From positions 124,001 through 188,000 of IMG/VR virus record IMGVR_UViG_3300020810_001156: DNA of 64,000 nt; one strand, 5' to 3'. The translations under genes and the position numbers were made by a program. Numbering within the stretch: position 1 is the first letter of the stretch; each line of letters begins with the position of its first letter. The notes beneath the pieces are model-generated. The model made no database searches and was not told where the DNA came from. It saw only the letters and a program-made list of their open reading frames with translations. Shown piece by piece: positions 30,406 to 37,225 of this stretch.

Positions 30406-32715
30406 ATGGCAGAAAGAATAGTATCACCTGGAGTATTTACGAGAGAAAATGACCTTTCGTTCTTAGCGCAGGGAGTAGGAGAAATCGGAGCAGCGTTTGT
30501 AGGACCTTTTAAACAAGGACCAGCGTTTGTTCCAACGATTGTAAGAACACAATCAGAATTTGAAGATAAGTTCGGAACACCTGATGGAACTTATTATACA
30601 GAGTACGCAGTACAAAACTATCTTAGAGAAGCTGGAACAGCAACAGTTGTTAGAGTTTTGGGTAAAACTGGCGCTGATGCTGGTTATTCTCAAGTAACAC
30701 CTGTTGGTTTAGTAGCTAGTGGTTCTGATGGTAGTCAAACACTTATTGCAACATTACATAATACTGTAAATGGTGATGACGAAGTAGGATTTGGTCCTTT
30801 TACTGTATCCCCATCATTAACTACATCTGGTTCATTTGTGGTAAGTGGTAGTGGATTAAGTAACATATCATCTTCACTATTATCATCAGCTGGTAATGAT
30901 GTAACTGATGTATTTGGTTCTGACCCATTAGGTTCTAAAGAAGCTTATGTGTATTCTTACTTTAAAAATGCAGTAAATAGTATTAACTTAGAAGTTGCTA
31001 ATGGTGAGGCAGTTACTGCTGAAGTACTTCCAACTCAAAACTTTACTTATGAAGCAAGTTGGGCATCTACACCATTTGTTAAATCACAACTAATCTCAGG
31101 TGTAAGAAGTGATTTATTTAAATTCCATACATTAGGATATGGAACAAATGAAAACTCCAGATTCAAAATTTCAATCTCCAATGTGAAAGCTGCCGGTGAA
31201 GATGGAGGTACTGATTATTCAGTATTCACAGTAATTATTCGTTCATTCTCTGATACGGATAAAAGACCTGTTGTATTAGAAACATTTAGTAATGTAAACT
31301 TAGACCCAGCATCACCAAACTTTATCGCTAGAAGAATCGGTGATAGATATTTAACTATCGATTCAAATGGTAAGATTACTGAAAATGGTGATTGGGTAAA
31401 CAATTCAAAATATATTAGAGTACAAGTAGCAGCTCAGGGTTCATATCCTGTATCTGCTGCACCATTCGGACATGGAGCATACTCTAACCCAATTAAAGCA
31501 ACCGATGAAACTATCGTTCCAGCAGTTGTTTACCAAACCGGTTCAGTAGTAAATACTGCTGGTAACCCAACATATTTTGCTGGTTTCGATTTCGAAACAG
31601 TTGGTGTAAAATATGATAACAACAATTATATCAAACCTTTACCTGAAAGTGTAGGAGTTGGTTCGAATGTTGATTTCGGATTCGATTCTCAACTTTCTTA
31701 TGTAATGAGTGGTTCTGATTCATCTGATATGGTGAAGAGACAATTTTCAATTGCATTCCAAGGTGGATTTGATGGACAATCACCTGCAACTAATATCAAC
31801 TTAGGTTCTGATATGAGTGCTGGTAATTCGCAAGGACTTGATTTATCATCAACTACGGCTGGTGGTTACCTATCATACTCTAAAGGTTTGAACGCAATTT
31901 CAAACGCTGATGAGTGGGATATCAATATGTTAGTAACTCCTGGTGTTGTAAGAACATTACACCCAGCAGTTGTTAGTAAGGCAATTGATGTTGTTGAAGC
32001 TAGAGCAGATGCATTTTACATCGCTGATTTCGCTGATGCTAGTTCAACAATTTCTGATGTAACAACTCAGGCAAACGCAGTAGATTCTAACTATGTTGGA
32101 ACTTACTATCCTTGGGTTAAGACAGTAGATACAAACACTAATAAATTAGTAAGTGTTCCACCTTCAGTATTATTACCTGCTGTGTACGCAGCAAATGACG
32201 CTATCGCAGCTGAATGGTTCGCACCTGCTGGTTTAAATAGAGGTGGTATCATAGGAGCAGCATCAGTATTGAATAGATTAACTCATTCTGAAAGAGATAC
32301 TTTATATGAAAACAAAGTAAACCCAATCGCAGCATTCCCTGGACAAGGTATTGTGGCATTCGGACAGAAAACATTGCAAGATAGAGCATCAGCATTAGAT
32401 AGAATCAATGTTAGAAGATTATTAATCAATGTTAAGAAATTTGTAGCATCTACATCTCGATTCTTAGTATTCGAACAAAATACGGCATCGACTAGAGGTA
32501 GATTTATCAACACTGTACAACCTTACTTAGAAGGTATCCAACAAAGACAAGGACTGTACGCATTTAAAGTAGTTATGGATGAGACTAACAACACACCTGA
32601 TGTGGTTGATAGAAACATTTTAGCTGGACAGATATTCCTACAACCTGCTAAGACCGCTGAATTCATTGTAATTGATTTCAACATCTTACCAACGGGAGCA
32701 TCGTTCTCAGCATAA
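30406..32715 (+). CDS. contractile tail sheath protein (gp18-like)
   Basis: MAERIVSPGVFTREND start; WFAPAGLNRG; LYENKVNPI; FGQKTLQ...ALDRINVRRL; KTAEFI.IDF. Confidence 0.97.
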   Translation: MAERIVSPGVFTRENDLSFLAQGVGEIGAAFVGPFKQGPAFVPTIVRTQSEFEDKFGTPDGTYYTEYAVQNYLREAGTATVVRVLGKTGADAGYSQVTPVGLVASGSDGSQTLIATLHNTVNGDDEVGFGPFTVSPSLTTSGSFVVSGSGLSNISSSLLSSAGNDVTDVFGSDPLGSKEAYVYSYFKNAVNSINLEVANGEAVTAEVLPTQNFTYEASWASTPFVKSQLISGVRSDLFKFHTLGYGTNENSRFKISISNVKAAGEDGGTDYSVFTVIIRSFSDTDKRPVVLETFSNVNLDPASPNFIARRIGDRYLTIDSNGKITENGDWVNNSKYIRVQVAAQGSYPVSAAPFGHGAYSNPIKATDETIVPAVVYQTGSVVNTAGNPTYFAGFDFETVGVKYDNNNYIKPLPESVGVGSNVDFGFDSQLSYVMSGSDSSDMVKRQFSIAFQGGFDGQSPATNINLGSDMSAGNSQGLDLSSTTAGGYLSYSKGLNAISNADEWDINMLVTPGVVRTLHPAVVSKAIDVVEARADAFYIADFADASSTISDVTTQANAVDSNYVGTYYPWVKTVDTNTNKLVSVPPSVLLPAVYAANDAIAAEWFAPAGLNRGGIIGAASVLNRLTHSERDTLYENKVNPIAAFPGQGIVAFGQKTLQDRASALDRINVRRLLINVKKFVASTSRFLVFEQNTASTRGRFINTVQPYLEGIQQRQGLYAFKVVMDETNNTPDVVDRNILAGQIFLQPAKTAEFIVIDFNILPTGASFSA

Positions 32716-32766: not shown

Positions 32767-33255
32767 ATGGCAGAAGTATTAGAATTTAACGAAATGTTCT
32801 TCACCAACTTCGAACCGAAGATGAAGAATCGCTATATTATGGAGATTGATGGTATTCAATCATACTTAATTAAAACAGCAGCGAGACCATCTATCAATTT
32901 CGAAACTGTGAAGTTAGACCACATTAACACTTATAGAAAATTACAAGGTAAGGGTGAGTGGCAAGATATCACAATCACATTATATGACCCAATCGTTCCA
33001 AGTGGAGCACAACAAGTGATGGAATGGGTGAGATTAGGATATGAATCTTTAACTGGTAGAAAAGGATACGCAGATTTCTACAAAAAAGATATCGATTTCT
33101 ATATGTTAGGACCTGTTGGTGATAAAATTGAACAATGGAAACTAAAAGGTGCATTCATTCAAGCAGCTAATTTCAATGATTTAGATTTCTCATCTAATGA
33201 CCCTGCCGATATTGAATTAACGCTTTCGTATGATTACGCAATATTAGAATTTTAA
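32767..33255 (+). CDS. tail tube protein (gp19-like)
   Basis: Follows the sheath; 162 aa with EPK..NRY, W.DITITLYD, W.LKGAFI, LTLSYDYA. Confidence 0.92.
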   Translation: MAEVLEFNEMFFTNFEPKMKNRYIMEIDGIQSYLIKTAARPSINFETVKLDHINTYRKLQGKGEWQDITITLYDPIVPSGAQQVMEWVRLGYESLTGRKGYADFYKKDIDFYMLGPVGDKIEQWKLKGAFIQAANFNDLDFSSNDPADIELTLSYDYAILEF

Positions 33256-33371: not shown

Positions 33372-34145
33372 ATGAGCGAAAATAAATTTGATTTCCCAAC
33401 TGAGGTAGTGGATTTACCATCAAAGGGATTAGTTTATCCAGAAGGACATCCTTTAAGAAAAGGAAACATTGAGATTAAATATATGACAGCAAGAGAAGAA
33501 GATATTCTTGCATCACAATCTCTAATTAAAAAGGGGGTAGTTTTAGATAAACTATTTGAATCAGTAGTAGTAGAGCCAGATGTTGATATCAATGATATCT
33601 TTATTGGTGATAAAAACGCTATTCTTTTAGCAACCAGAGTAATGGGTTATGGTGCTGATTATAAAGTAGAAGTAACTGACCCATCTACATTAGAACCACA
33701 AACAGTAACTATTGATTTATCTAAAGTAAAAACCAAAGATTTTGATGAAAAAATCTTAAATGGTGATAATTTGTATAAATTTACTTTACCTAAAAGTGGA
33801 ACTGAATTAGAATTTAAACTTCTTACACATGGTGATGAAATTGAAATCACAAAAGAAAATCAAGCATTGGTTAGATTGTACAAAGGTAAAGGTGATACTT
33901 CATTCGATGTAACTACTCGTTTGAAATATATGATTCAATCGGTAGATGGTAATCAAGATAGAGGATATATTACTAAGTGGGTTCAAAATTCATTCTTAGC
34001 ATTAGATACAAAAGCATTCAGAAAATTTGTTAGAGAGTTAAGTCCTGATATGGATTTAACATTCAACTTTGTTTCAGAGTTGACGGGTGAAGAGGAGGCA
34101 CTCGATATCCCGTTTGGGGTATCGTTTTTTTACCCTTCCGAATGA
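33372..34145 (+). CDS. baseplate hub assembly / tail chaperone (gp26-like)
   Basis: LPSKG..YP, KYMTAREEDIL, GDKNAILLA.R..GYG motifs; lies between tube and tape measure. Confidence 0.8.
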   Translation: MSENKFDFPTEVVDLPSKGLVYPEGHPLRKGNIEIKYMTAREEDILASQSLIKKGVVLDKLFESVVVEPDVDINDIFIGDKNAILLATRVMGYGADYKVEVTDPSTLEPQTVTIDLSKVKTKDFDEKILNGDNLYKFTLPKSGTELEFKLLTHGDEIEITKENQALVRLYKGKGDTSFDVTTRLKYMIQSVDGNQDRGYITKWVQNSFLALDTKAFRKFVRELSPDMDLTFNFVSELTGEEEALDIPFGVSFFYPSE

Positions 34146-34338
34146 TTATAGTATCCAACTTCATAACCAAATTTGGGAGTTGGTTAACTTTGGTAATGGA
34201 TTTACTTGGAGAGATGTTTACTTCATGCCAATCCAATGGAGAAAGTTTTACTTTAAGAAATTGGTCGATTTAAAAAAGAAGGAAGCAGACGAATACAAAA
34301 AAGCAGAACGTAAATCAAAAGTAAGGGTTAGGAAATAA
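34087..34338 (+). CDS. gp51-like chaperone C-terminal part, probably expressed by +1 frameshift from the upstream gene
   Basis: QIWELV..G.GFTW.DVY.MPI.WRKFY pattern; overlaps the upstream ORF at a T7 run; only a GTG start buried in the upstream CDS. Confidence 0.7.
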   Translation: MKRRHSISRLGYRFFTLPNDYSIQLHNQIWELVNFGNGFTWRDVYFMPIQWRKFYFKKLVDLKKKEADEYKKAERKSKVRVRK

Positions 34339-34354
34339 TCCTTACTTTTTTTTT
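34321..34354 (+). terminator. Rho-independent terminator
   Basis: GTAAGGGTTA-GGAAA-TAATCCTTAC stem (one G-U pair) plus T9. Confidence 0.85.
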
Positions 34355-34396
34355 ATCCAATATTTATAGATGTATAAAACTATAAAGAGATTACCT

Positions 34397-34606
34397 ATGT
34401 CAAAAGAAAAAACAAACGAAGGATTATTTGGGGCAGCCAAAAAATTCTCTGATGCATTTTTTGATGGTTTGAAAACTAATGCAGTTAATAAAGCATTAAA
34501 ACAAGCCGAAAAGAACAAAAAAGTTCCATCTCCTATTATTAAAAAAATGAAACAAATCGATAAACTAGCTAAAGAGCTAGAAGATGATTTAAAGTACTAT
34601 TCATAA
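34397..34606 (+). CDS. small basic hypothetical protein (start probably 34397, MSKEK)
   Basis: ATATTTATA at 34360-34368 abuts the ATG at 34370, which favours the next ATG. Confidence 0.5.
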   Translation: MSKEKTNEGLFGAAKKFSDAFFDGLKTNAVNKALKQAEKNKKVPSPIIKKMKQIDKLAKELEDDLKYYS

Positions 34607-34618
34607 TAATATCTCAGT

Positions 34619-37225
34619 ATGGCTAGCAGAGACGAATTACAAATTTTACAACAACTAAGAAGAGAGTCAAAAGCTTATCTTGATGAACTTTTAGCGGGTA
34701 AAACTGCTGAAGGGCGCATTGATGCAAAAAAACTTCCGGAATATAAAGCCCAGCTAGCAAAATTAAAAGAGATAAATGAACAAATAAAAGAAATACAAGC
34801 CAATCACAAAATTGTAGTAGATAGTTTAATTCAACAAGAATCAAAACTAAAAGGATTAACTGGTATTCAAGCATCTTTAGTTAATTTAGATAGAGATAGG
34901 TTAAAAATACAACAAGGTCTTAAAGGGCCTACGCAAGATGCGATAAATTCAATTGCATCATTGAATCAGGATTTGTTATCAATGTCAGCTGAAGATTCTG
35001 TTGCACGAGAACTTCAAGAAAAATCTATAAATGAACAAATTGCAGCTTTAAGGAAAAAAGGAACTGTTAGTGAAGAGATTCTAAATAATTTAGAACAACA
35101 AAGAGATGTTGCCCTCAAAATGTCTGGATTGACTGAAAAACAGAAAAAATTCTTAAATAAACAATTAGAAGTATATGATGGTATAAAAGATACCATTGGT
35201 GGAATATTAGAAACTGCATCATTACTTACATCAACTGTTGGTGGAGTATTAGGTAGTGCTTTAATTGGTGCTGGTGTTGCTGGTAAAAAATTATTGAAAA
35301 CTTCATATGAATTGGGTGGTTCTCTAACTTCTACCTCTAATATAGCAACCACATTATTTGGGACAGTGTTCCCAGACGCAGTTGGTGTTACTAAATCTCT
35401 TTCAAAAGAATTTGGTGGATTAAGTGATGTATCATTAAAAACACAATTCAGAACTAACGTAATAGCTAAGAACTTAGGTATTAGTGCTGGTGAAGCGGCA
35501 TCTTTAACAGGTTCGTTTGCTCGTTTAAATGATGGTTCTGCCGAAACTGCACAAAACTTAATTCAACAAACCCAGAATTTAGCACAACAAAATGGATTAG
35601 TTCCTGCCGATGTAATGGCTGATGTAGCCGCATCTGCTGAAGAGTTTGCACTCTATGGTAAGGCTGGTGGTACGAATATAGCTGAAGCTGCTGTTGCTGC
35701 TGGTAAGTTAGGTGTTAGTATGAAAACCCTTAGTGGTATCACCGATAACCTATTAGATTTTGAATCATCGATAAACGCCGAATTAGAATTAGGTGCAATG
35801 TTAGGTAAGAATATCAACTTAGATAGAGCCAGAGCATTAGCATACGAAGGAGATATAGGTGGTTCAGTAAGAGAAACACTTTCCGCATTGGGTGGTATTG
35901 AGGAATTCAATAAAATGGATTATTTCCAAAAGAAACAAACCGCAGCACTATTAGGCGTATCGGTGGAAGAATTCCAAAAGATGGCTGATAATGCTGATAA
36001 ATTGGATAAAAACGGCCAGATAACCTTATCTACTTATGATAAATTAACAAACACTGCTAAAGCATTTGGTTCGCAAATTTTGAGTGGTGTACAAGGTTTA
36101 GGTAGTGTGGCAGTTGCTGCTGGGCAGATGGGATTCAATTTAAAGGATGGTTTAAAATCCATGAAAGGAATGGGTGGGTTAACCGGAAAACTTAAAGGAT
36201 TATTGGGTAAAGATGCATTATCAAAAGCAAGAAAGAACTTATCAGATAAACAAATAGCAGCTGGATTTGGGGGTAAGAAAGCCAAAGATATGTTAGCAGC
36301 TAAAACACCAAAAGTACCAGAAACTTCAGTTAGTGATAATTTAAATAAAACCGCAGGTAGTAAAGGACCTAAAGCTAGTAATTTACTAAAAGGTGCTGCT
36401 GCTATCCTTATTCTAGCAGCTGCATTATTCGTTGCTGCTAAAGCATTCCAAGAATTCGGTTCAGTAACATGGCCTGCTGTTGGGATGGGATTAGCTAGTT
36501 TAGTTGGTTTAGCTGCAATTGCTTATGTGTTAGGAAAAGCTCAAGGTGAAATGATTAAGGGTGCAATTGCTGTGGCTATTTTAGGAGCTGCACTTATTCC
36601 ATTCGCATTCTCAATGAGTTTAATTGCTGGATTGGATATTGGTTCAGTAATGGCAGCAGCGGCAGGATTGGTAGTATTCTCAGCAGCTGTGTTCGGACTT
36701 GGTGCATTAATGATGACTGGTGTAGGGGCATTTATATTTGGTGCTGGATTAGCTGCATTAGCTGGATTGGGTGTATCTATGATGGTATTGGGTGCTGGTT
36801 TATTAGTTGCAGCAGCTGGATTCCAAGCAATTGGAGGTTCGATGGGAAGTGTGGTATCACTTATATCTCAAGTTAAAGATGTTTTAGGTGGTATGTTCCA
36901 ATATATCGCACCTATTGCCGCATTAGCATTGGCATTGGTTGGATTAGCTGGTGCATTAACACTGGTTGGTGTAGCTGGTATTGCTGCTCTACCAGGTCTG
37001 ATGGCAGTTGCTGCTGTTGGAACAATCGCAATGGGAGTTGGTTCTCTATTAGGATTTGGTGGAGATGAAGGTGGAGGTTCTGATTCTGATTTAATAACTG
37101 AAATTAGAGGATTGAGAGAAGATTTAAACAATGGTAAAGTTGCAGTTTACTTAGATGGGCAGAAAGTAACTGCTGGAGTTTCAAGAGTAGTAAGTAGAGT
37201 GGGAAGTAATTCTTACGCAACATAA
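34619..37225 (+). CDS. tape measure protein
   Basis: Ala/Gly-rich helical protein; NLLDFESSI.AELE...INLDRAR; long hydrophobic C-terminal segments; ends VYLDGQKV. Confidence 0.88.
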   Translation: MASRDELQILQQLRRESKAYLDELLAGKTAEGRIDAKKLPEYKAQLAKLKEINEQIKEIQANHKIVVDSLIQQESKLKGLTGIQASLVNLDRDRLKIQQGLKGPTQDAINSIASLNQDLLSMSAEDSVARELQEKSINEQIAALRKKGTVSEEILNNLEQQRDVALKMSGLTEKQKKFLNKQLEVYDGIKDTIGGILETASLLTSTVGGVLGSALIGAGVAGKKLLKTSYELGGSLTSTSNIATTLFGTVFPDAVGVTKSLSKEFGGLSDVSLKTQFRTNVIAKNLGISAGEAASLTGSFARLNDGSAETAQNLIQQTQNLAQQNGLVPADVMADVAASAEEFALYGKAGGTNIAEAAVAAGKLGVSMKTLSGITDNLLDFESSINAELELGAMLGKNINLDRARALAYEGDIGGSVRETLSALGGIEEFNKMDYFQKKQTAALLGVSVEEFQKMADNADKLDKNGQITLSTYDKLTNTAKAFGSQILSGVQGLGSVAVAAGQMGFNLKDGLKSMKGMGGLTGKLKGLLGKDALSKARKNLSDKQIAAGFGGKKAKDMLAAKTPKVPETSVSDNLNKTAGSKGPKASNLLKGAAAILILAAALFVAAKAFQEFGSVTWPAVGMGLASLVGLAAIAYVLGKAQGEMIKGAIAVAILGAALIPFAFSMSLIAGLDIGSVMAAAAGLVVFSAAVFGLGALMMTGVGAFIFGAGLAALAGLGVSMMVLGAGLLVAAAGFQAIGGSMGSVVSLISQVKDVLGGMFQYIAPIAALALALVGLAGALTLVGVAGIAALPGLMAVAAVGTIAMGVGSLLGFGGDEGGGSDSDLITEIRGLREDLNNGKVAVYLDGQKVTAGVSRVVSRVGSNSYAT

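What the first reader, a model, noticed from the sequence alone, without database searches (positions are those of the whole stretch)
34110..34338. Probable +1 (or -2) programmed frameshift in the tail chaperone
Seen: the gp26-like ORF ends TCG TTT TTT TAC CCT TCC GAA TGA with T7 at 34125-34131. The +1 frame reads TTT TTT ACC CTT CCG AAT... into a gp51-like domain whose only upstream start is a GTG inside the previous CDS, and a strong terminator sits at its end. Slippage on the Phe codons would give a 253+68 = 321-aa fusion alongside the 257-aa product. Established: chaperone frameshifts before tape measure genes (lambda G/GT) are usually -1, and T4 gp26 and gp51 are separate genes. A +1 event in a T4-like myovirus would be unusual.
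Basis: partly seen in the sequence, partly recalled or inferred. Interest (0 to 1): 0.7.

Follow-up and report, generated by a model that had tools for sequence, protein, structure and literature searches.

The report
Plus-one frameshift in tail chaperone gene
A large phage makes a short and a long tail-assembly chaperone from one gene by slipping one base forward on a run of seven T's, and its relatives show that phage T4's separate gp26 and gp51 genes are the same pair.

Summary
The 257-aa gp26-like ORF (33372-34145) ends TCG TTT TTT TAC CCT TCC GAA TGA, with T7 at 34125-34131. The +1 frame stays open to 34338 and is followed by a terminator-like hairpin.

In 149 of 158 unique homologous genes a homologous extension follows in the +1 frame, never in frame 0 or -1. 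T7 is kept in 137 of the 149. The other 12 keep an in-frame UUU followed by C or U. Many loci have no start codon for the extension.

Natural in-frame long forms exist and read ..SFFGITPQY.., as a +1 slip predicts. These always sit beside a second, extension-less paralogue, which is the T4 gp26 + gp51 arrangement.

T4-like cyanophages make the same pair by a canonical -1 shift (U_UUU_UUC plus a 3' hairpin). The window's clade has a GC-rich hairpin directly 5' of the run and no 3' structure.

The predicted fold's three best PDB matches are the three solved tail assembly chaperones named in PMC9603447.

Best reading: programmed +1 ribosomal frameshifting gives a 321-aa gp51-like form beside the 257-aa form. 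Hairpin-driven transcriptional loss of one U is the main rival. This is a new variant of the lambda G/GT theme.

The parts
32767..33255 (+). Tail tube gene (gp19-like). It lies directly upstream; the sheath gene is at 30406-32715.
   Evidence: Pfam PF06841 E 6e-8 and phrog_4542 E 1e-31
33372..34145 (+). gp26-like tail assembly chaperone ORF. The zero-frame product is 257 aa and ends ..GVSFFYPSE*.
   Evidence: PF12322 at 31.1 bits against a cut-off of 24.5, and phrog_150. AF2 model pLDDT 90. BFVD matches to 'baseplate hub assembly' proteins. VIA-align ranks 1-3 are 3FGX, 3KLU and 2OB9.
34093..34098 (+). AGGAGG, 27 nt before the run. It is kept at synonymous sites across the family. Its role is unexplained.
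   Evidence: The codon at -30 is GAG in 92 loci and GAA in 12, against 19% GAG elsewhere. The phage's own genes do not use Shine-Dalgarno sites.
34103..34124 (+). GC-rich hairpin (9 bp, loop GUUU) that ends one base before the run. Candidate 5' stimulator.
   Evidence: Scored as terminator-like together with the T7. Across the family the 30 nt 5' of the run fold at -6.8 against -1.9 kcal/mol, median rank 2.8%, GC 51% against 32%. Shuffle z is -1.25.
34125..34131 (+). Slip site T7. The zero frame reads UUU UUU U.
   Evidence: T7 in 137 of 149 loci, and every locus keeps an in-frame UUU followed by C or U. The base before the run is never T, 0 of 149. The +1-frame stop lies 2 nt before the run in 16 loci, and stop0 lies 8-17 nt after it.
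34132..34338 (+). +1-frame extension: 68 aa plus the TAA stop. It is helical and ends in a basic tail, and it is the counterpart of the gp51 tail. The joined product (33372-34130 plus 34132-34335) is 321 aa.
   Evidence: The extension profile finds 1248 cluster representatives, some at the C-terminus of 293-318-aa in-frame proteins. AF2 pLDDT 83, three helices. Fusion is P0003.
34317..34349 (+). Terminator-like hairpin with a T-run, straddling the end of the extension ORF and lying before the small ORF and the tape-measure-like gene (34619-37225).
   Evidence: 14-bp stem found by the scan

Best explanation
The gene at 33372-34145 encodes the tail assembly chaperone of a 252.6-kb contractile-tailed phage. 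It belongs to the T4 gp26/gp51 family, PF12322.

Most ribosomes read it in frame and make a 257-aa protein. A minority slip one base forward on UUU UUU U (34125-34131), where peptidyl-tRNA-Phe, alone or together with the A-site tRNA-Phe, re-pairs with UUU in the +1 frame. These ribosomes read on to 34338 and make a 321-aa protein: the same N-terminal body plus a 68-aa helical tail.

A GC-rich hairpin that ends one base before the run (34103-34124) probably favours the forward slip and suppresses the backward one.

The two products would correspond to lambda gpG and gpGT and to T4 gp26 and gp51. The short, abundant form coats the tape measure. The rare long form adds a domain that recruits another tail part.

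Shown here: the conserved +1 arrangement, the conserved slip site and 5' hairpin, the lack of start codons, and the natural in-frame equivalents.
Inferred: that the event is ribosomal, its efficiency, and what the tail binds.

My odds:
- A trans-frame product is made: about 0.9.
- The event is ribosomal +1: about 0.6.
For: 1. The arrangement is universal. 149 of 158 unique homologous genes carry a homologous extension in the +1 frame, and none carry it in frame 0 or -1. This includes Bacillus phage HSE3 and Listeria phage LIS04 at 25-29% identity.

2. The slip site is under nucleotide-level selection.
- T7 in 137 of 149 loci, although TTT is only 73-77% of Phe codons elsewhere.
- The base before the run is never T.
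- Flanking third positions are saturated.

3. No independent start is possible in many loci.
- 36 of 79 loci have no ATG, GTG or TTG upstream of the run in the +1 frame.
- In 16 loci a +1-frame stop lies 2 nt before the run.
- In some loci the first start codon is more than 130-220 nt downstream.

4. Conservation periodicity switches from frame 0 to frame +1 after the run.

5. Natural in-frame long forms of 293-318 aa exist.
- They align with the predicted fusion without a gap at the junction: SFFTLPNDY against SFFGITPQY.
- In the two kinds of locus examined they sit next to a second PF12322 paralogue that ends ..FFWP..* without an extension. There the run is broken (TTC TTT T) and the +1 frame closes at once.
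- The window's own genome has only one PF12322 gene.

6. The sister clade is a mirror image.
- In 67 of 67 T4-like cyanophage loci the gp51-like ORF is in the -1 frame behind U_UUU_UUC/A.
- That clade has a strong 3' hairpin and no 5' structure.
- The window's clade has the 5' hairpin and no 3' structure.
- Experiments show that a hairpin abutting a shift site on its 5' side stimulates +1 and attenuates -1 on 70S ribosomes (PMC6321510).

7. The chaperone identity is supported.
- The gene lies between the tube gene and a tape-measure-like gene.
- The three best of 48,161 PDB chains are the three solved tail assembly chaperones named in PMC9603447.
- T4 gp26 and gp51 are called hub assembly chaperones, and gp51 is absent from virions (PMC3004832).
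Against: - No protein or read-level RNA evidence was available. Only assembled contigs of metatranscriptome runs could be laid. They show U7 without indels, but they cannot show rare variants.
- The zero-frame A-site codon after the run (UAC or UGG) is not an obvious slow codon, which classical +1 sites need.
- The hairpin plus U7 also looks like an intrinsic terminator and fits stem-loop-driven RNA polymerase slippage.
- Much of the hairpin core follows from conserved residues (I-P-x-G-V). Pair -16/-7 shows no covariation, and the composition-controlled z is modest at -1.25.
- The chaperone fold matches have low Z (4.8-6.8).
- The conserved GGAGG 27 nt upstream is not explained by this model.
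Confidence: 0.6

Rival explanations
1. Programmed transcriptional realignment. The nascent hairpin at 34103-34124 forms just behind RNA polymerase while it copies the T7. [quoted passage not shown] A fraction of transcripts then carry U6. Ordinary translation of those transcripts gives the same 321-aa protein.
For: - The hairpin plus T7 is scored as an intrinsic-terminator-like site.
- The last paired base lies 0-5 nt from the run in 126 of 149 loci.
- A homopolymer of exactly 7 is conserved, not just UUU_Y.
- There is a precedent. A stem-loop directly 5' of a slippage motif gives transcripts lacking one base in Roseiflexus IS630 (Penno 2015, as described in PMC5009743).
- The variants TTTCTTT and TTTCTAT could lose the C through a tolerated rU:dG mismatch, as T5C5 does (my inference).
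Against: - Contigs from four RNA libraries cross the run with U7 and no indel, so U6 is not a major species. This test is weak.
- The sister clade uses a textbook ribosomal -1 signal (heptamer, spacer, 3' hairpin) at the same codon pair. That makes a ribosomal event here the simpler reading.
- The family-wide hairpin is weak for a terminator-type element (mean -6.8 kcal/mol).
- Actual termination at the run would leave the short product's mRNA without a stop codon.
Confidence: 0.25
2. -2 ribosomal frameshift on the U-run. It reaches the same frame but adds one residue, giving ..SFFFTLP.. .
For: The frame arithmetic allows it. The A-site tRNA-Phe could re-pair two bases back within the run. -2 shifts on U-rich heptamers are known (PMC3458567; the arterivirus case in PMC5009743).
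Against: - In-frame long forms have two, not three, hydrophobic residues before G/T-L, and they align with the +1 product without a gap.
- The 12 loci with TTTCTTT, TTCTTTT, TTTCTAT or TTCTTTC cannot re-pair after -2.
- There is no 3' structure to pull the mRNA back.
Confidence: 0.04
3. The extension is a separate small protein, started at GTG 34087 or by reinitiation after the TGA. There is no fusion.
For: - Gene callers annotate such ORFs: a TTG start in Mel-JY01, ATG starts in HSE3 and L003.
- 43 of 79 loci have some start codon upstream in the +1 frame.
- In cyanophages the tail ORF has its own ATG.
Against: - 36 of 79 loci have no upstream start.
- In 16 loci the frame opens only 2 nt before the run.
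- In several loci the first start would remove most of the conserved domain.
- The supposed starts are not conserved in position or kind.
- The ATG of the ATGA overlap at 34142 is in the -1 frame.
- In-frame fusions exist in nature.
- The T7 conservation would be left unexplained.
Confidence: 0.04
4. Artefact or decay: a one-base assembly error in a homopolymer, or a gene recently broken by an indel.
For: Homopolymers are error-prone in sequencing.
Against: - The same two-frame layout is found in 149 independent assemblies and in isolate genomes down to 25% identity.
- All 120 closest database proteins stop at about 257 aa.
- DNA and RNA contigs from several studies agree on T7.
Confidence: 0.01

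Closest known systems
Lambda gpG/gpGT, with P2 E/E+E' and other G-T type tail assembly chaperones
   Same: - The gene lies just before the tape measure gene.
- A short product and a rarer C-terminally extended product share their N-terminus.
- The second ORF has no start of its own.
- A conserved slippery run sits near the 3' end.
- The solved chaperones 3FGX, 3KLU and 2OB9 are the best fold matches.
   Different: - The shift is +1, not -1.
- The site is UUU_UUU_U rather than X_XXY_YYZ in the -1 register.
- The RNA stimulator candidate lies 5', not 3'.
- The body is 250 aa and seems to hold two chaperone-like modules.
- There is no detectable sequence similarity.
T4 gp26 and gp51 (hub assembly chaperones, Pfam PF12322)
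   Same: - Same protein family, by Pfam, phrog_150 and predicted fold.
- gp26 ends ..KEFFELL*, at the same FF motif.
- gp51 is the body plus a ~48-aa tail.
   Different: - T4 encodes the short and long forms as two diverged, divergently transcribed genes, with no recoding.
- T4's proteins carry Cys pairs that the window's protein lacks.
- Direct similarity of the two tails is not significant.
gp26-'gp51' of T4-like cyanophages, for example Prochlorococcus phage P-HM1
   Same: - Same family and the same FF codon pair as the shift site.
- The tail ORF follows directly.
- The tail is homologous to T4 gp51's tail and structurally like the window's extension.
   Different: - The shift is -1, on U_UUU_UUC/A.
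- A strong hairpin lies about 6 nt downstream and there is none upstream.
- The records annotate these as two separate genes. I found no paper in the library that describes this frameshift.
E. coli prfB (RF2) +1 frameshift and engineered 5'-hairpin +1 stimulators
   Same: The peptidyl-tRNA slips forward onto a matching +1 codon (CUU_U there, UUU_U here). A duplex abutting the E site on the 5' side stimulates the slip (PMC6321510).
   Different: - There is no stop or hungry codon in the A site.
- The 5' duplex is an mRNA hairpin, not Shine-Dalgarno:anti-SD pairing. This phage's genes show no SD use.
- The output is a second structural product, not autoregulation.
Roseiflexus IS630 stem-loop-mediated transcriptional slippage (Penno et al. 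2015, described in PMC5009743)
   Same: A GC-rich hairpin lies directly 5' of a slippage-prone run. The outcome is loss of one base, which is equivalent to a +1 frame change.
   Different: The motif there is T5C5, in a transposase gene. Here there is no RNA evidence for U6.
Other +1 cases in phage structural genes: Listeria phage PSA cps/tsh, and the probable +1 chaperone shift of haloarchaeal myovirus HSTV-2 (PMC5009743)
   Same: +1 recoding gives a C-terminally extended structural or assembly protein.
   Different: PSA shifts on CCC before a stop codon or a pseudoknot. It was not tested whether HSTV-2's chaperone belongs to PF12322.

Membership tests
G/GT-type tail assembly chaperone with programmed frameshift | The gene lies between the tail tube (major tail) gene and the tape measure gene | tested here: met
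   The order is sheath 30406-32715, tube 32767-33255, this gene, an 868-aa tape-measure-like gene 34619-37225. The order is the same in Mel-JY01, immuto, HSE3 and LIS04.
G/GT-type tail assembly chaperone with programmed frameshift | An overlapping second ORF without its own start, conserved in one alternative frame | tested here: met
   149 of 158 genes have it in the +1 frame. 36 of 79 loci have no upstream start.
G/GT-type tail assembly chaperone with programmed frameshift | A -1 shift on an X_XXY_YYZ heptamer | tested here: not met
   The frame is +1. The zero frame reads UUU UUU U, and the base before the run is never U.
G/GT-type tail assembly chaperone with programmed frameshift | The fold of the solved chaperones (HK97 gp13 type) | tested here: inconclusive
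   VIA-align ranks 1-3 of 48,161 chains are 3FGX (Z 6.8), 3KLU (Z 5.2) and 2OB9 (Z 4.8), each covering one half of the model. Foldseek finds nothing in the PDB. The Z values are below the tool's own caution level of 8.
G/GT-type tail assembly chaperone with programmed frameshift | Both products are made in a fixed ratio, bind the tape measure, and are absent from virions | not testable with these tools
   This needs protein work.
Pfam PF12322 T4_baseplate (gp26/gp51) | A profile match above the curated cut-off | tested here: met
   31.1 bits against 24.5. phrog_150 E 6.5e-11. It is the only such gene in the 252.6-kb genome.
Pfam PF12322 T4_baseplate (gp26/gp51) | The same predicted fold as family members | tested here: met
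   66 BFVD matches with E<=1e-3. TM 0.78-0.82 to the SP-15 hub subunit and to an uncultured phage protein. Many matches are named baseplate hub assembly protein or chaperone.
Pfam PF12322 T4_baseplate (gp26/gp51) | Two Cys pairs, as in T4 gp26 and gp51 and the in-frame long forms | tested here: not met
   The window's 257-aa protein has no Cys. Four Cys columns are nearly invariant in the in-frame long forms.
Classical bacterial +1 ribosomal frameshift site (prfB type) | The P-site codon re-pairs in the +1 frame | tested here: met
   UUU_U here. All 149 loci keep UUU followed by C or U.
Classical bacterial +1 ribosomal frameshift site (prfB type) | A slowly decoded A-site codon (stop or rare codon) | tested here: inconclusive
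   The A-site codon is UAC or UGG, or UUU if the first Phe codon is in the P site. There is no stop. The host's tRNA pool is unknown and the phage has no tRNA genes.
Classical bacterial +1 ribosomal frameshift site (prfB type) | A 5' stimulatory duplex abutting the E site | tested here: met
   The hairpin ends 0-5 nt before the run in 126 of 149 loci. Median rank is 2.8% among own-gene windows. It is absent in the -1 sister clade.
Stem-loop-mediated transcriptional slippage | Transcripts lacking one base at the motif | tested here: inconclusive
   Contigs from four RNA libraries show U7 only. Contigs drop rare variants, and no raw reads were offered.

The most novel reading that the evidence does not exclude
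The GC-rich hairpin plus U7 inside the coding sequence is a terminator-like device. It makes RNA polymerase drop one U in a set fraction of transcripts. The long chaperone would then arise by programmed transcriptional realignment in a phage structural gene, and the same element may also trim transcription into the tape measure operon. I know of no programmed transcriptional realignment in a tail assembly chaperone. It would also be a second natural case of the Roseiflexus type of hairpin-driven deletion slippage, spread over more than a thousand sequence clusters.
Probability: 0.22. Interest if true: 0.85.

Novelty: new variant of a known kind. Interest (0 to 1): 0.72.

Why it matters
Reviews state that the G-T chaperone frameshift is conserved in long-tailed phages 'except T4' (PMC5009743). 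The role of T4 gp26 and gp51 in hub assembly has stayed vague (PMC3004832). The data here suggest one answer. gp26/gp51 proteins are the tail assembly chaperones of T4-type tails, and the short-plus-long pair is made in three ways:
- by a -1 shift in T4-like cyanophages;
- by a +1 event in a very large aquatic and Firmicute phage clade, which includes this window;
- by two duplicated genes in T4.

Two further points follow.
- The two recoding clades carry mirror-image RNA elements at the same codon pair: a 3' hairpin for -1 and a 5' hairpin for +1. This is a natural test bed for what sets the direction of a slip on a U-run.
- Thousands of database records split or miss the long form, so annotation can be corrected.

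Tried and rejected
- BLASTP of the extension against T4 gp51, and of the body against T4 gp26: nothing significant.
- hhalign of my shallow family alignments against T4-like gp51 alignments failed even for the body domain that Pfam unites. The test is therefore uninformative.
- The extension HMM against T4-type gp51 tails: no hit.
- Pfam and PHROG scans of the extension alone: nothing.
- phmmer of the fusion against PDB sequences: nothing.
- Foldseek of the body model against the PDB: nothing.
- Foldseek of the extension model against BFVD: no match with E<=1e-3, only suggestive names.
- Complex prediction of the extension with the tube protein: no answer, score 0.00. It counts neither for nor against binding.
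- RNA-library contigs: no indel at the run, but they cannot see rare variants.
- Covariation at the free pair -16/-7 of the hairpin: none beyond expectation.
- A long-range pairing of the purine-rich -40..-27 stretch with the U-run and CCUNCC: predicted in the window at -23.7 kcal/mol, but family support is only modest (duplex rank about 7%, z -1.26). Not adopted.
- A Shine-Dalgarno-type stimulator: set aside, because the phage's own genes show no SD use.
- A phage tRNA with an expanded anticodon loop: excluded, because the genome has no tRNA genes.
- The -1-frame ORF 34142-34273: its length is not conserved among relatives.
Full report
**1. The observation**

The sequence is as described.
- ORF 33372-34145 (257 aa) ends TCG TTT TTT TAC CCT TCC GAA TGA, with T7 at 34125-34131.
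- The frame one base forward reads TTT TTT ACC CTT CCG AAT GAT TAT AGT ... and stays open to the TAA at 34336-34338.
- Its only upstream start codon is GTG 34087.
- A 14-bp terminator-like hairpin (34317-34349) straddles its end.
- Reading with one base skipped at the run gives a 321-aa protein, P0003, with junction ..PFGVSFFTLPNDYSIQ...
- The gene order is sheath, gp19-like tube, this gene, a 78-aa ORF, then an 868-aa tape-measure-like protein.
- The body matches Pfam PF12322 'T4_baseplate' (31.1 bits, cut-off 24.5) and phrog_150. The extension alone matches no family.
- The window lies in a 252.6-kb phage record that holds this single PF12322 gene. The record has no tRNA genes and 33% G+C.

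**2. Conservation of the two-frame layout**

tblastn against GenBank phages found relatives in Microcystis phage Mel-JY01, Flavobacterium phage immuto, an uncultured 484-kb phage, and Bacillus, Listeria and Streptococcus phages. Two scans of IMG/VR added 160 loci.
- Of 158 unique genes, 149 carry a homologous extension directly behind in the +1 frame. None carry it in frame 0 or -1.
- The seven bases at the Phe-Phe codons are TTTTTTT in 137 loci, TTTCTTT in 7, TTCTTTT in 3, TTTCTAT in 1 and TTCTTTC in 1. Every locus therefore keeps an in-frame UUU followed by C or U.
- In the first set of 79 loci, all seven positions are T in 77-79 loci. TTT is only 73% of Phe codons elsewhere, and third positions nearby carry 0.05-0.5 bit.
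- Upstream of the run, conservation follows frame 0. From about +18 it follows frame +1. Between +7 and +17 both frames are constrained.
- The base before the run is never T (0 of 149, against a baseline of 40% T at third positions). The run is therefore held at exactly seven, and the -1 heptamer U_UUU_UUU is avoided.

**3. Not a separate gene, not an error**
- 36 of 79 loci have no ATG, GTG or TTG in the +1 frame upstream of the run.
- In 16 loci a +1-frame stop lies 2 nt before the run.
- In L040, L050, L052 and L060 the first start is more than 130-220 nt downstream.
- The zero-frame stop follows the run by 8-17 nt, so the shift window is the run itself plus a few bases.
- The 120 closest proteins in a 5.8-billion-protein collection are mostly 252-273 aa (a few of 220-238 aa) and cover 67-80% of the fusion.
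- DNA and RNA contigs from several studies agree on T7.

**4. Natural fusions and the two-gene alternative**

A profile of 49 extensions (A3) found 1248 cluster representatives (E<=1e-3) among 1.84 billion.
- Most are 60-110-aa ORFs with arbitrary called starts.
- About ten are 293-318-aa proteins with the extension at their C-terminus.
- These align with P0003 from end to end, with no gap at the junction: SFFTLPNDYSIQLH against SFFGITPQYKPAIH. This is what a net +1 shift inside the run predicts. A -2 shift would give FFF.
- In the two kinds of locus I could fetch (L101/L102 and L103), the in-frame long form sits beside a second PF12322 gene that ends ..NFFWPGLNE* or ..SFFWPDAGV* with no extension. 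There the run is broken (TTC TTT T) and the +1 frame closes after a few codons.

**5. The T4 connection**
- T4 gp26 (208 aa) and gp51 (249 aa) both match PF12322 over its full length (E 9e-64 and 4e-52). gp51 has about 48 extra C-terminal residues, and gp26 ends ..KEFFELL*.
- On phrog_150, gp26 covers positions 14-235 and gp51 covers 13-280. The window's short form covers 8-232 and the fusion covers 8-249. Four in-frame long forms run on to positions 272-280.
- Direct comparison of the extension with T4's tail is not significant.
- The bridge is the 53-aa 'gp51' of Prochlorococcus phage P-HM1. It appeared among the fold neighbours of the extension model (TM 0.80 by target), and it is plainly homologous to T4's tail: MTFYQTNFSLV.. 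against FTFYQINHTLV...

**6. A sister clade with the opposite shift**
- In P-HM1, gp26 ends GAT TTT TTC GTA TAG, and 'gp51' lies in the -1 frame, which is open from the run onward.
- Reading through by -1 gives DFFRIALFHEGIMTFYQ.., colinear with T4 gp51 DVFKLLVNPDEIFTFYQ...
- In 67 of 67 unique T4-like cyanophage loci the gp51-like ORF is in the -1 frame behind U_UUU_UUC or U_UUU_UUA. Often a -1-frame stop lies right before the run.
- The P-HM1 record annotates two separate genes.

**7. RNA context**
- In the window a 9-bp hairpin (34103-34124, loop GUUU) ends one base before the run. The scan scores it, together with the T7, as terminator-like.
- Over 149 loci the 30 nt 5' of the run fold at a mean of -6.8 kcal/mol, against -1.9 for other windows of the same genes. 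The median rank is 2.8%. G+C is 51% against 32%. The last paired base lies 0-5 nt from the run in 126 loci.
- The dinucleotide-shuffle z is -1.25, against -0.3 for controls.
- Synonymous sites contribute. The Gly codon at -9 is GGG in 65% of loci, against 5-8% elsewhere.
- The stems differ in sequence and register between subclades, including HSE3.
- No structure stands out 3' of the run (-4.3 kcal/mol, rank 0.45).
- The -1 cyanophage clade is the reverse. It has nothing 5' (-2.1, rank 0.56, no G+C rise) and a strong hairpin about 6 nt 3' of the heptamer (-11.2, median rank 0.0).
- Experiments on 70S ribosomes show that a hairpin abutting the shift site on the 5' side stimulates +1 and attenuates -1 (PMC6321510).

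**8. Mechanism**

The most economical reading is ribosomal.
- With UUU UUU in the P and A sites (or the second UUU in the P site), tRNA-Phe re-pairs perfectly one base forward. This uses exactly seven U's.
- The 5' hairpin biases the slip forward.

The same anatomy also fits stem-loop-driven RNA polymerase realignment that drops one base, as in Roseiflexus IS630 (PMC5009743).
- Contigs from four metatranscriptome libraries cross the run with U7 and no indel. U6 is therefore not a major species, but contigs cannot show a few per cent.
- I put the ribosomal event at about 0.6, the transcriptional event at about 0.25, and -2 and separate initiation at a few per cent each.
- A Shine-Dalgarno stimulator is unlikely, because the phage's 198 long ORFs show no SD enrichment (15% against a 13% background).

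**9. Function**
- The AF2 model of the body is confident (pLDDT 90, pTM 0.85).
- Foldseek finds no PDB match, but it finds many viral 'baseplate hub assembly' proteins.
- An exhaustive VIA-align search ranks 3FGX (Z 6.8, residues 1-102), 3KLU YqbN (Z 5.2, residues 130-225) and 2OB9 HK97 gp13 (Z 4.8) first, second and third of 48,161 chains. PMC9603447 calls all three tail assembly chaperones.
- The Z values are low, but the coincidence of identity is striking. It suggests two chaperone-like modules in tandem.
- The extension folds as three helices with a basic end.
- What the extension binds is unknown. By analogy with lambda gpT it would recruit a tail part.

**10. Unexplained**
- A GGAGG at about -32..-27 (window 34093-34098) is kept at synonymous sites: GAG 92 against GAA 12, where GAG is 19% of Glu codons elsewhere. 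It lies too far from the run for the known SD-type stimulators.
- A long stem that pairs the purine-rich stretch with the U-run is predicted in the window, but support across the family is only modest.

**11. Novelty**
- Chaperone frameshifts are well known, and +1 has been suspected for one haloarchaeal myovirus (PMC5009743).
- In the searched library I found nothing that links PF12322 or gp26/gp51 with G/GT-type recoding, nothing that describes this +1 site, and nothing that describes the cyanophage -1 site. Subscription journals are not covered.
- I rate it a new variant of a known kind, of real interest to phage-assembly and recoding specialists.

Noticed in passing
L086:7803-9229 (T4 genes 26 and 51): T4 gp26 and gp51 are paralogues. 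Both match PF12322 over its full length, and gp51 carries an extra ~48-aa tail. With the data here they look like a gpG/gpGT pair encoded as two genes.
   Followed up: yes
L184:9361-9557 (Prochlorococcus phage P-HM1), and L185-L264: In T4-like cyanophages the small annotated 'gp51' is only the tail. It lies in the -1 frame behind U_UUU_UUC/A at the end of gp26, with a strong hairpin (GCCCUC..GAGGGC) about 6 nt downstream. This holds in 67 of 67 unique loci. It looks like an unannotated canonical -1 frameshift.
   Followed up: yes
window 34093-34098: AGGAGG lies inside the coding sequence 27 nt before the run. It is kept at synonymous sites across the family (GAG 92 against GAA 12, baseline 19% GAG), in a phage whose genes do not use Shine-Dalgarno sites. 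Its function is unknown.
   Followed up: partly
window 34124 (the base before the run): This third codon position is never T in 149 loci (C 85, G 48, A 16; baseline 40% T). The run never becomes T8, and the -1 heptamer U_UUU_UUU never arises.
   Followed up: yes
window 34317-34349: A strong terminator-like hairpin (14 bp plus a T-run) straddles the end of the extension ORF, between the sheath-tube-chaperone genes and the tape-measure-like gene. It may set a step down in transcription.
   Followed up: no
L101:5139-6927, L102, L103:1595-3709: Some uncultured phages carry two adjacent PF12322 genes. One is short-type, ending ..FFWP..* with a broken run (TTC TTT T). The other is an in-frame long form with the extension domain.
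   Followed up: yes
whole genome G000 (252,603 bases): There are no tRNA genes, G+C is 33%, and upstream regions are A-rich with no Shine-Dalgarno enrichment (15% against a 13% background). This is the pattern of hosts such as Bacteroidota, but the host was not determined.
   Followed up: partly
L001:4746-4982, L002:4851-4961, L085:4203-4432, L084:4243-4413: GenBank records treat the extension inconsistently. Mel-JY01 gives it a TTG start inside the previous gene. Immuto calls only its last 36 codons. HSE3 starts it at an internal ATG. LIS04 leaves it unannotated. None marks a frameshift.
   Followed up: yes
window 33372-34142 compared with alignment A6: The window's chaperone has no cysteine. 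T4 gp26 and gp51 and the in-frame long forms keep two Cys pairs, which look like a zinc ribbon.
   Followed up: no
window 34142-34273: A 43-aa ORF in the -1 frame starts at the ATG of the ATGA overlap with the stop codon. Its length varies from 2 to 82 codons among relatives, so it is probably not coding.
   Followed up: partly
window 34370-34606: A small 78-aa ORF lies between the chaperone and the tape-measure-like gene. ORFs of similar size occur in Mel-JY01 and in the 484-kb uncultured phage. It has no family match.
   Followed up: no
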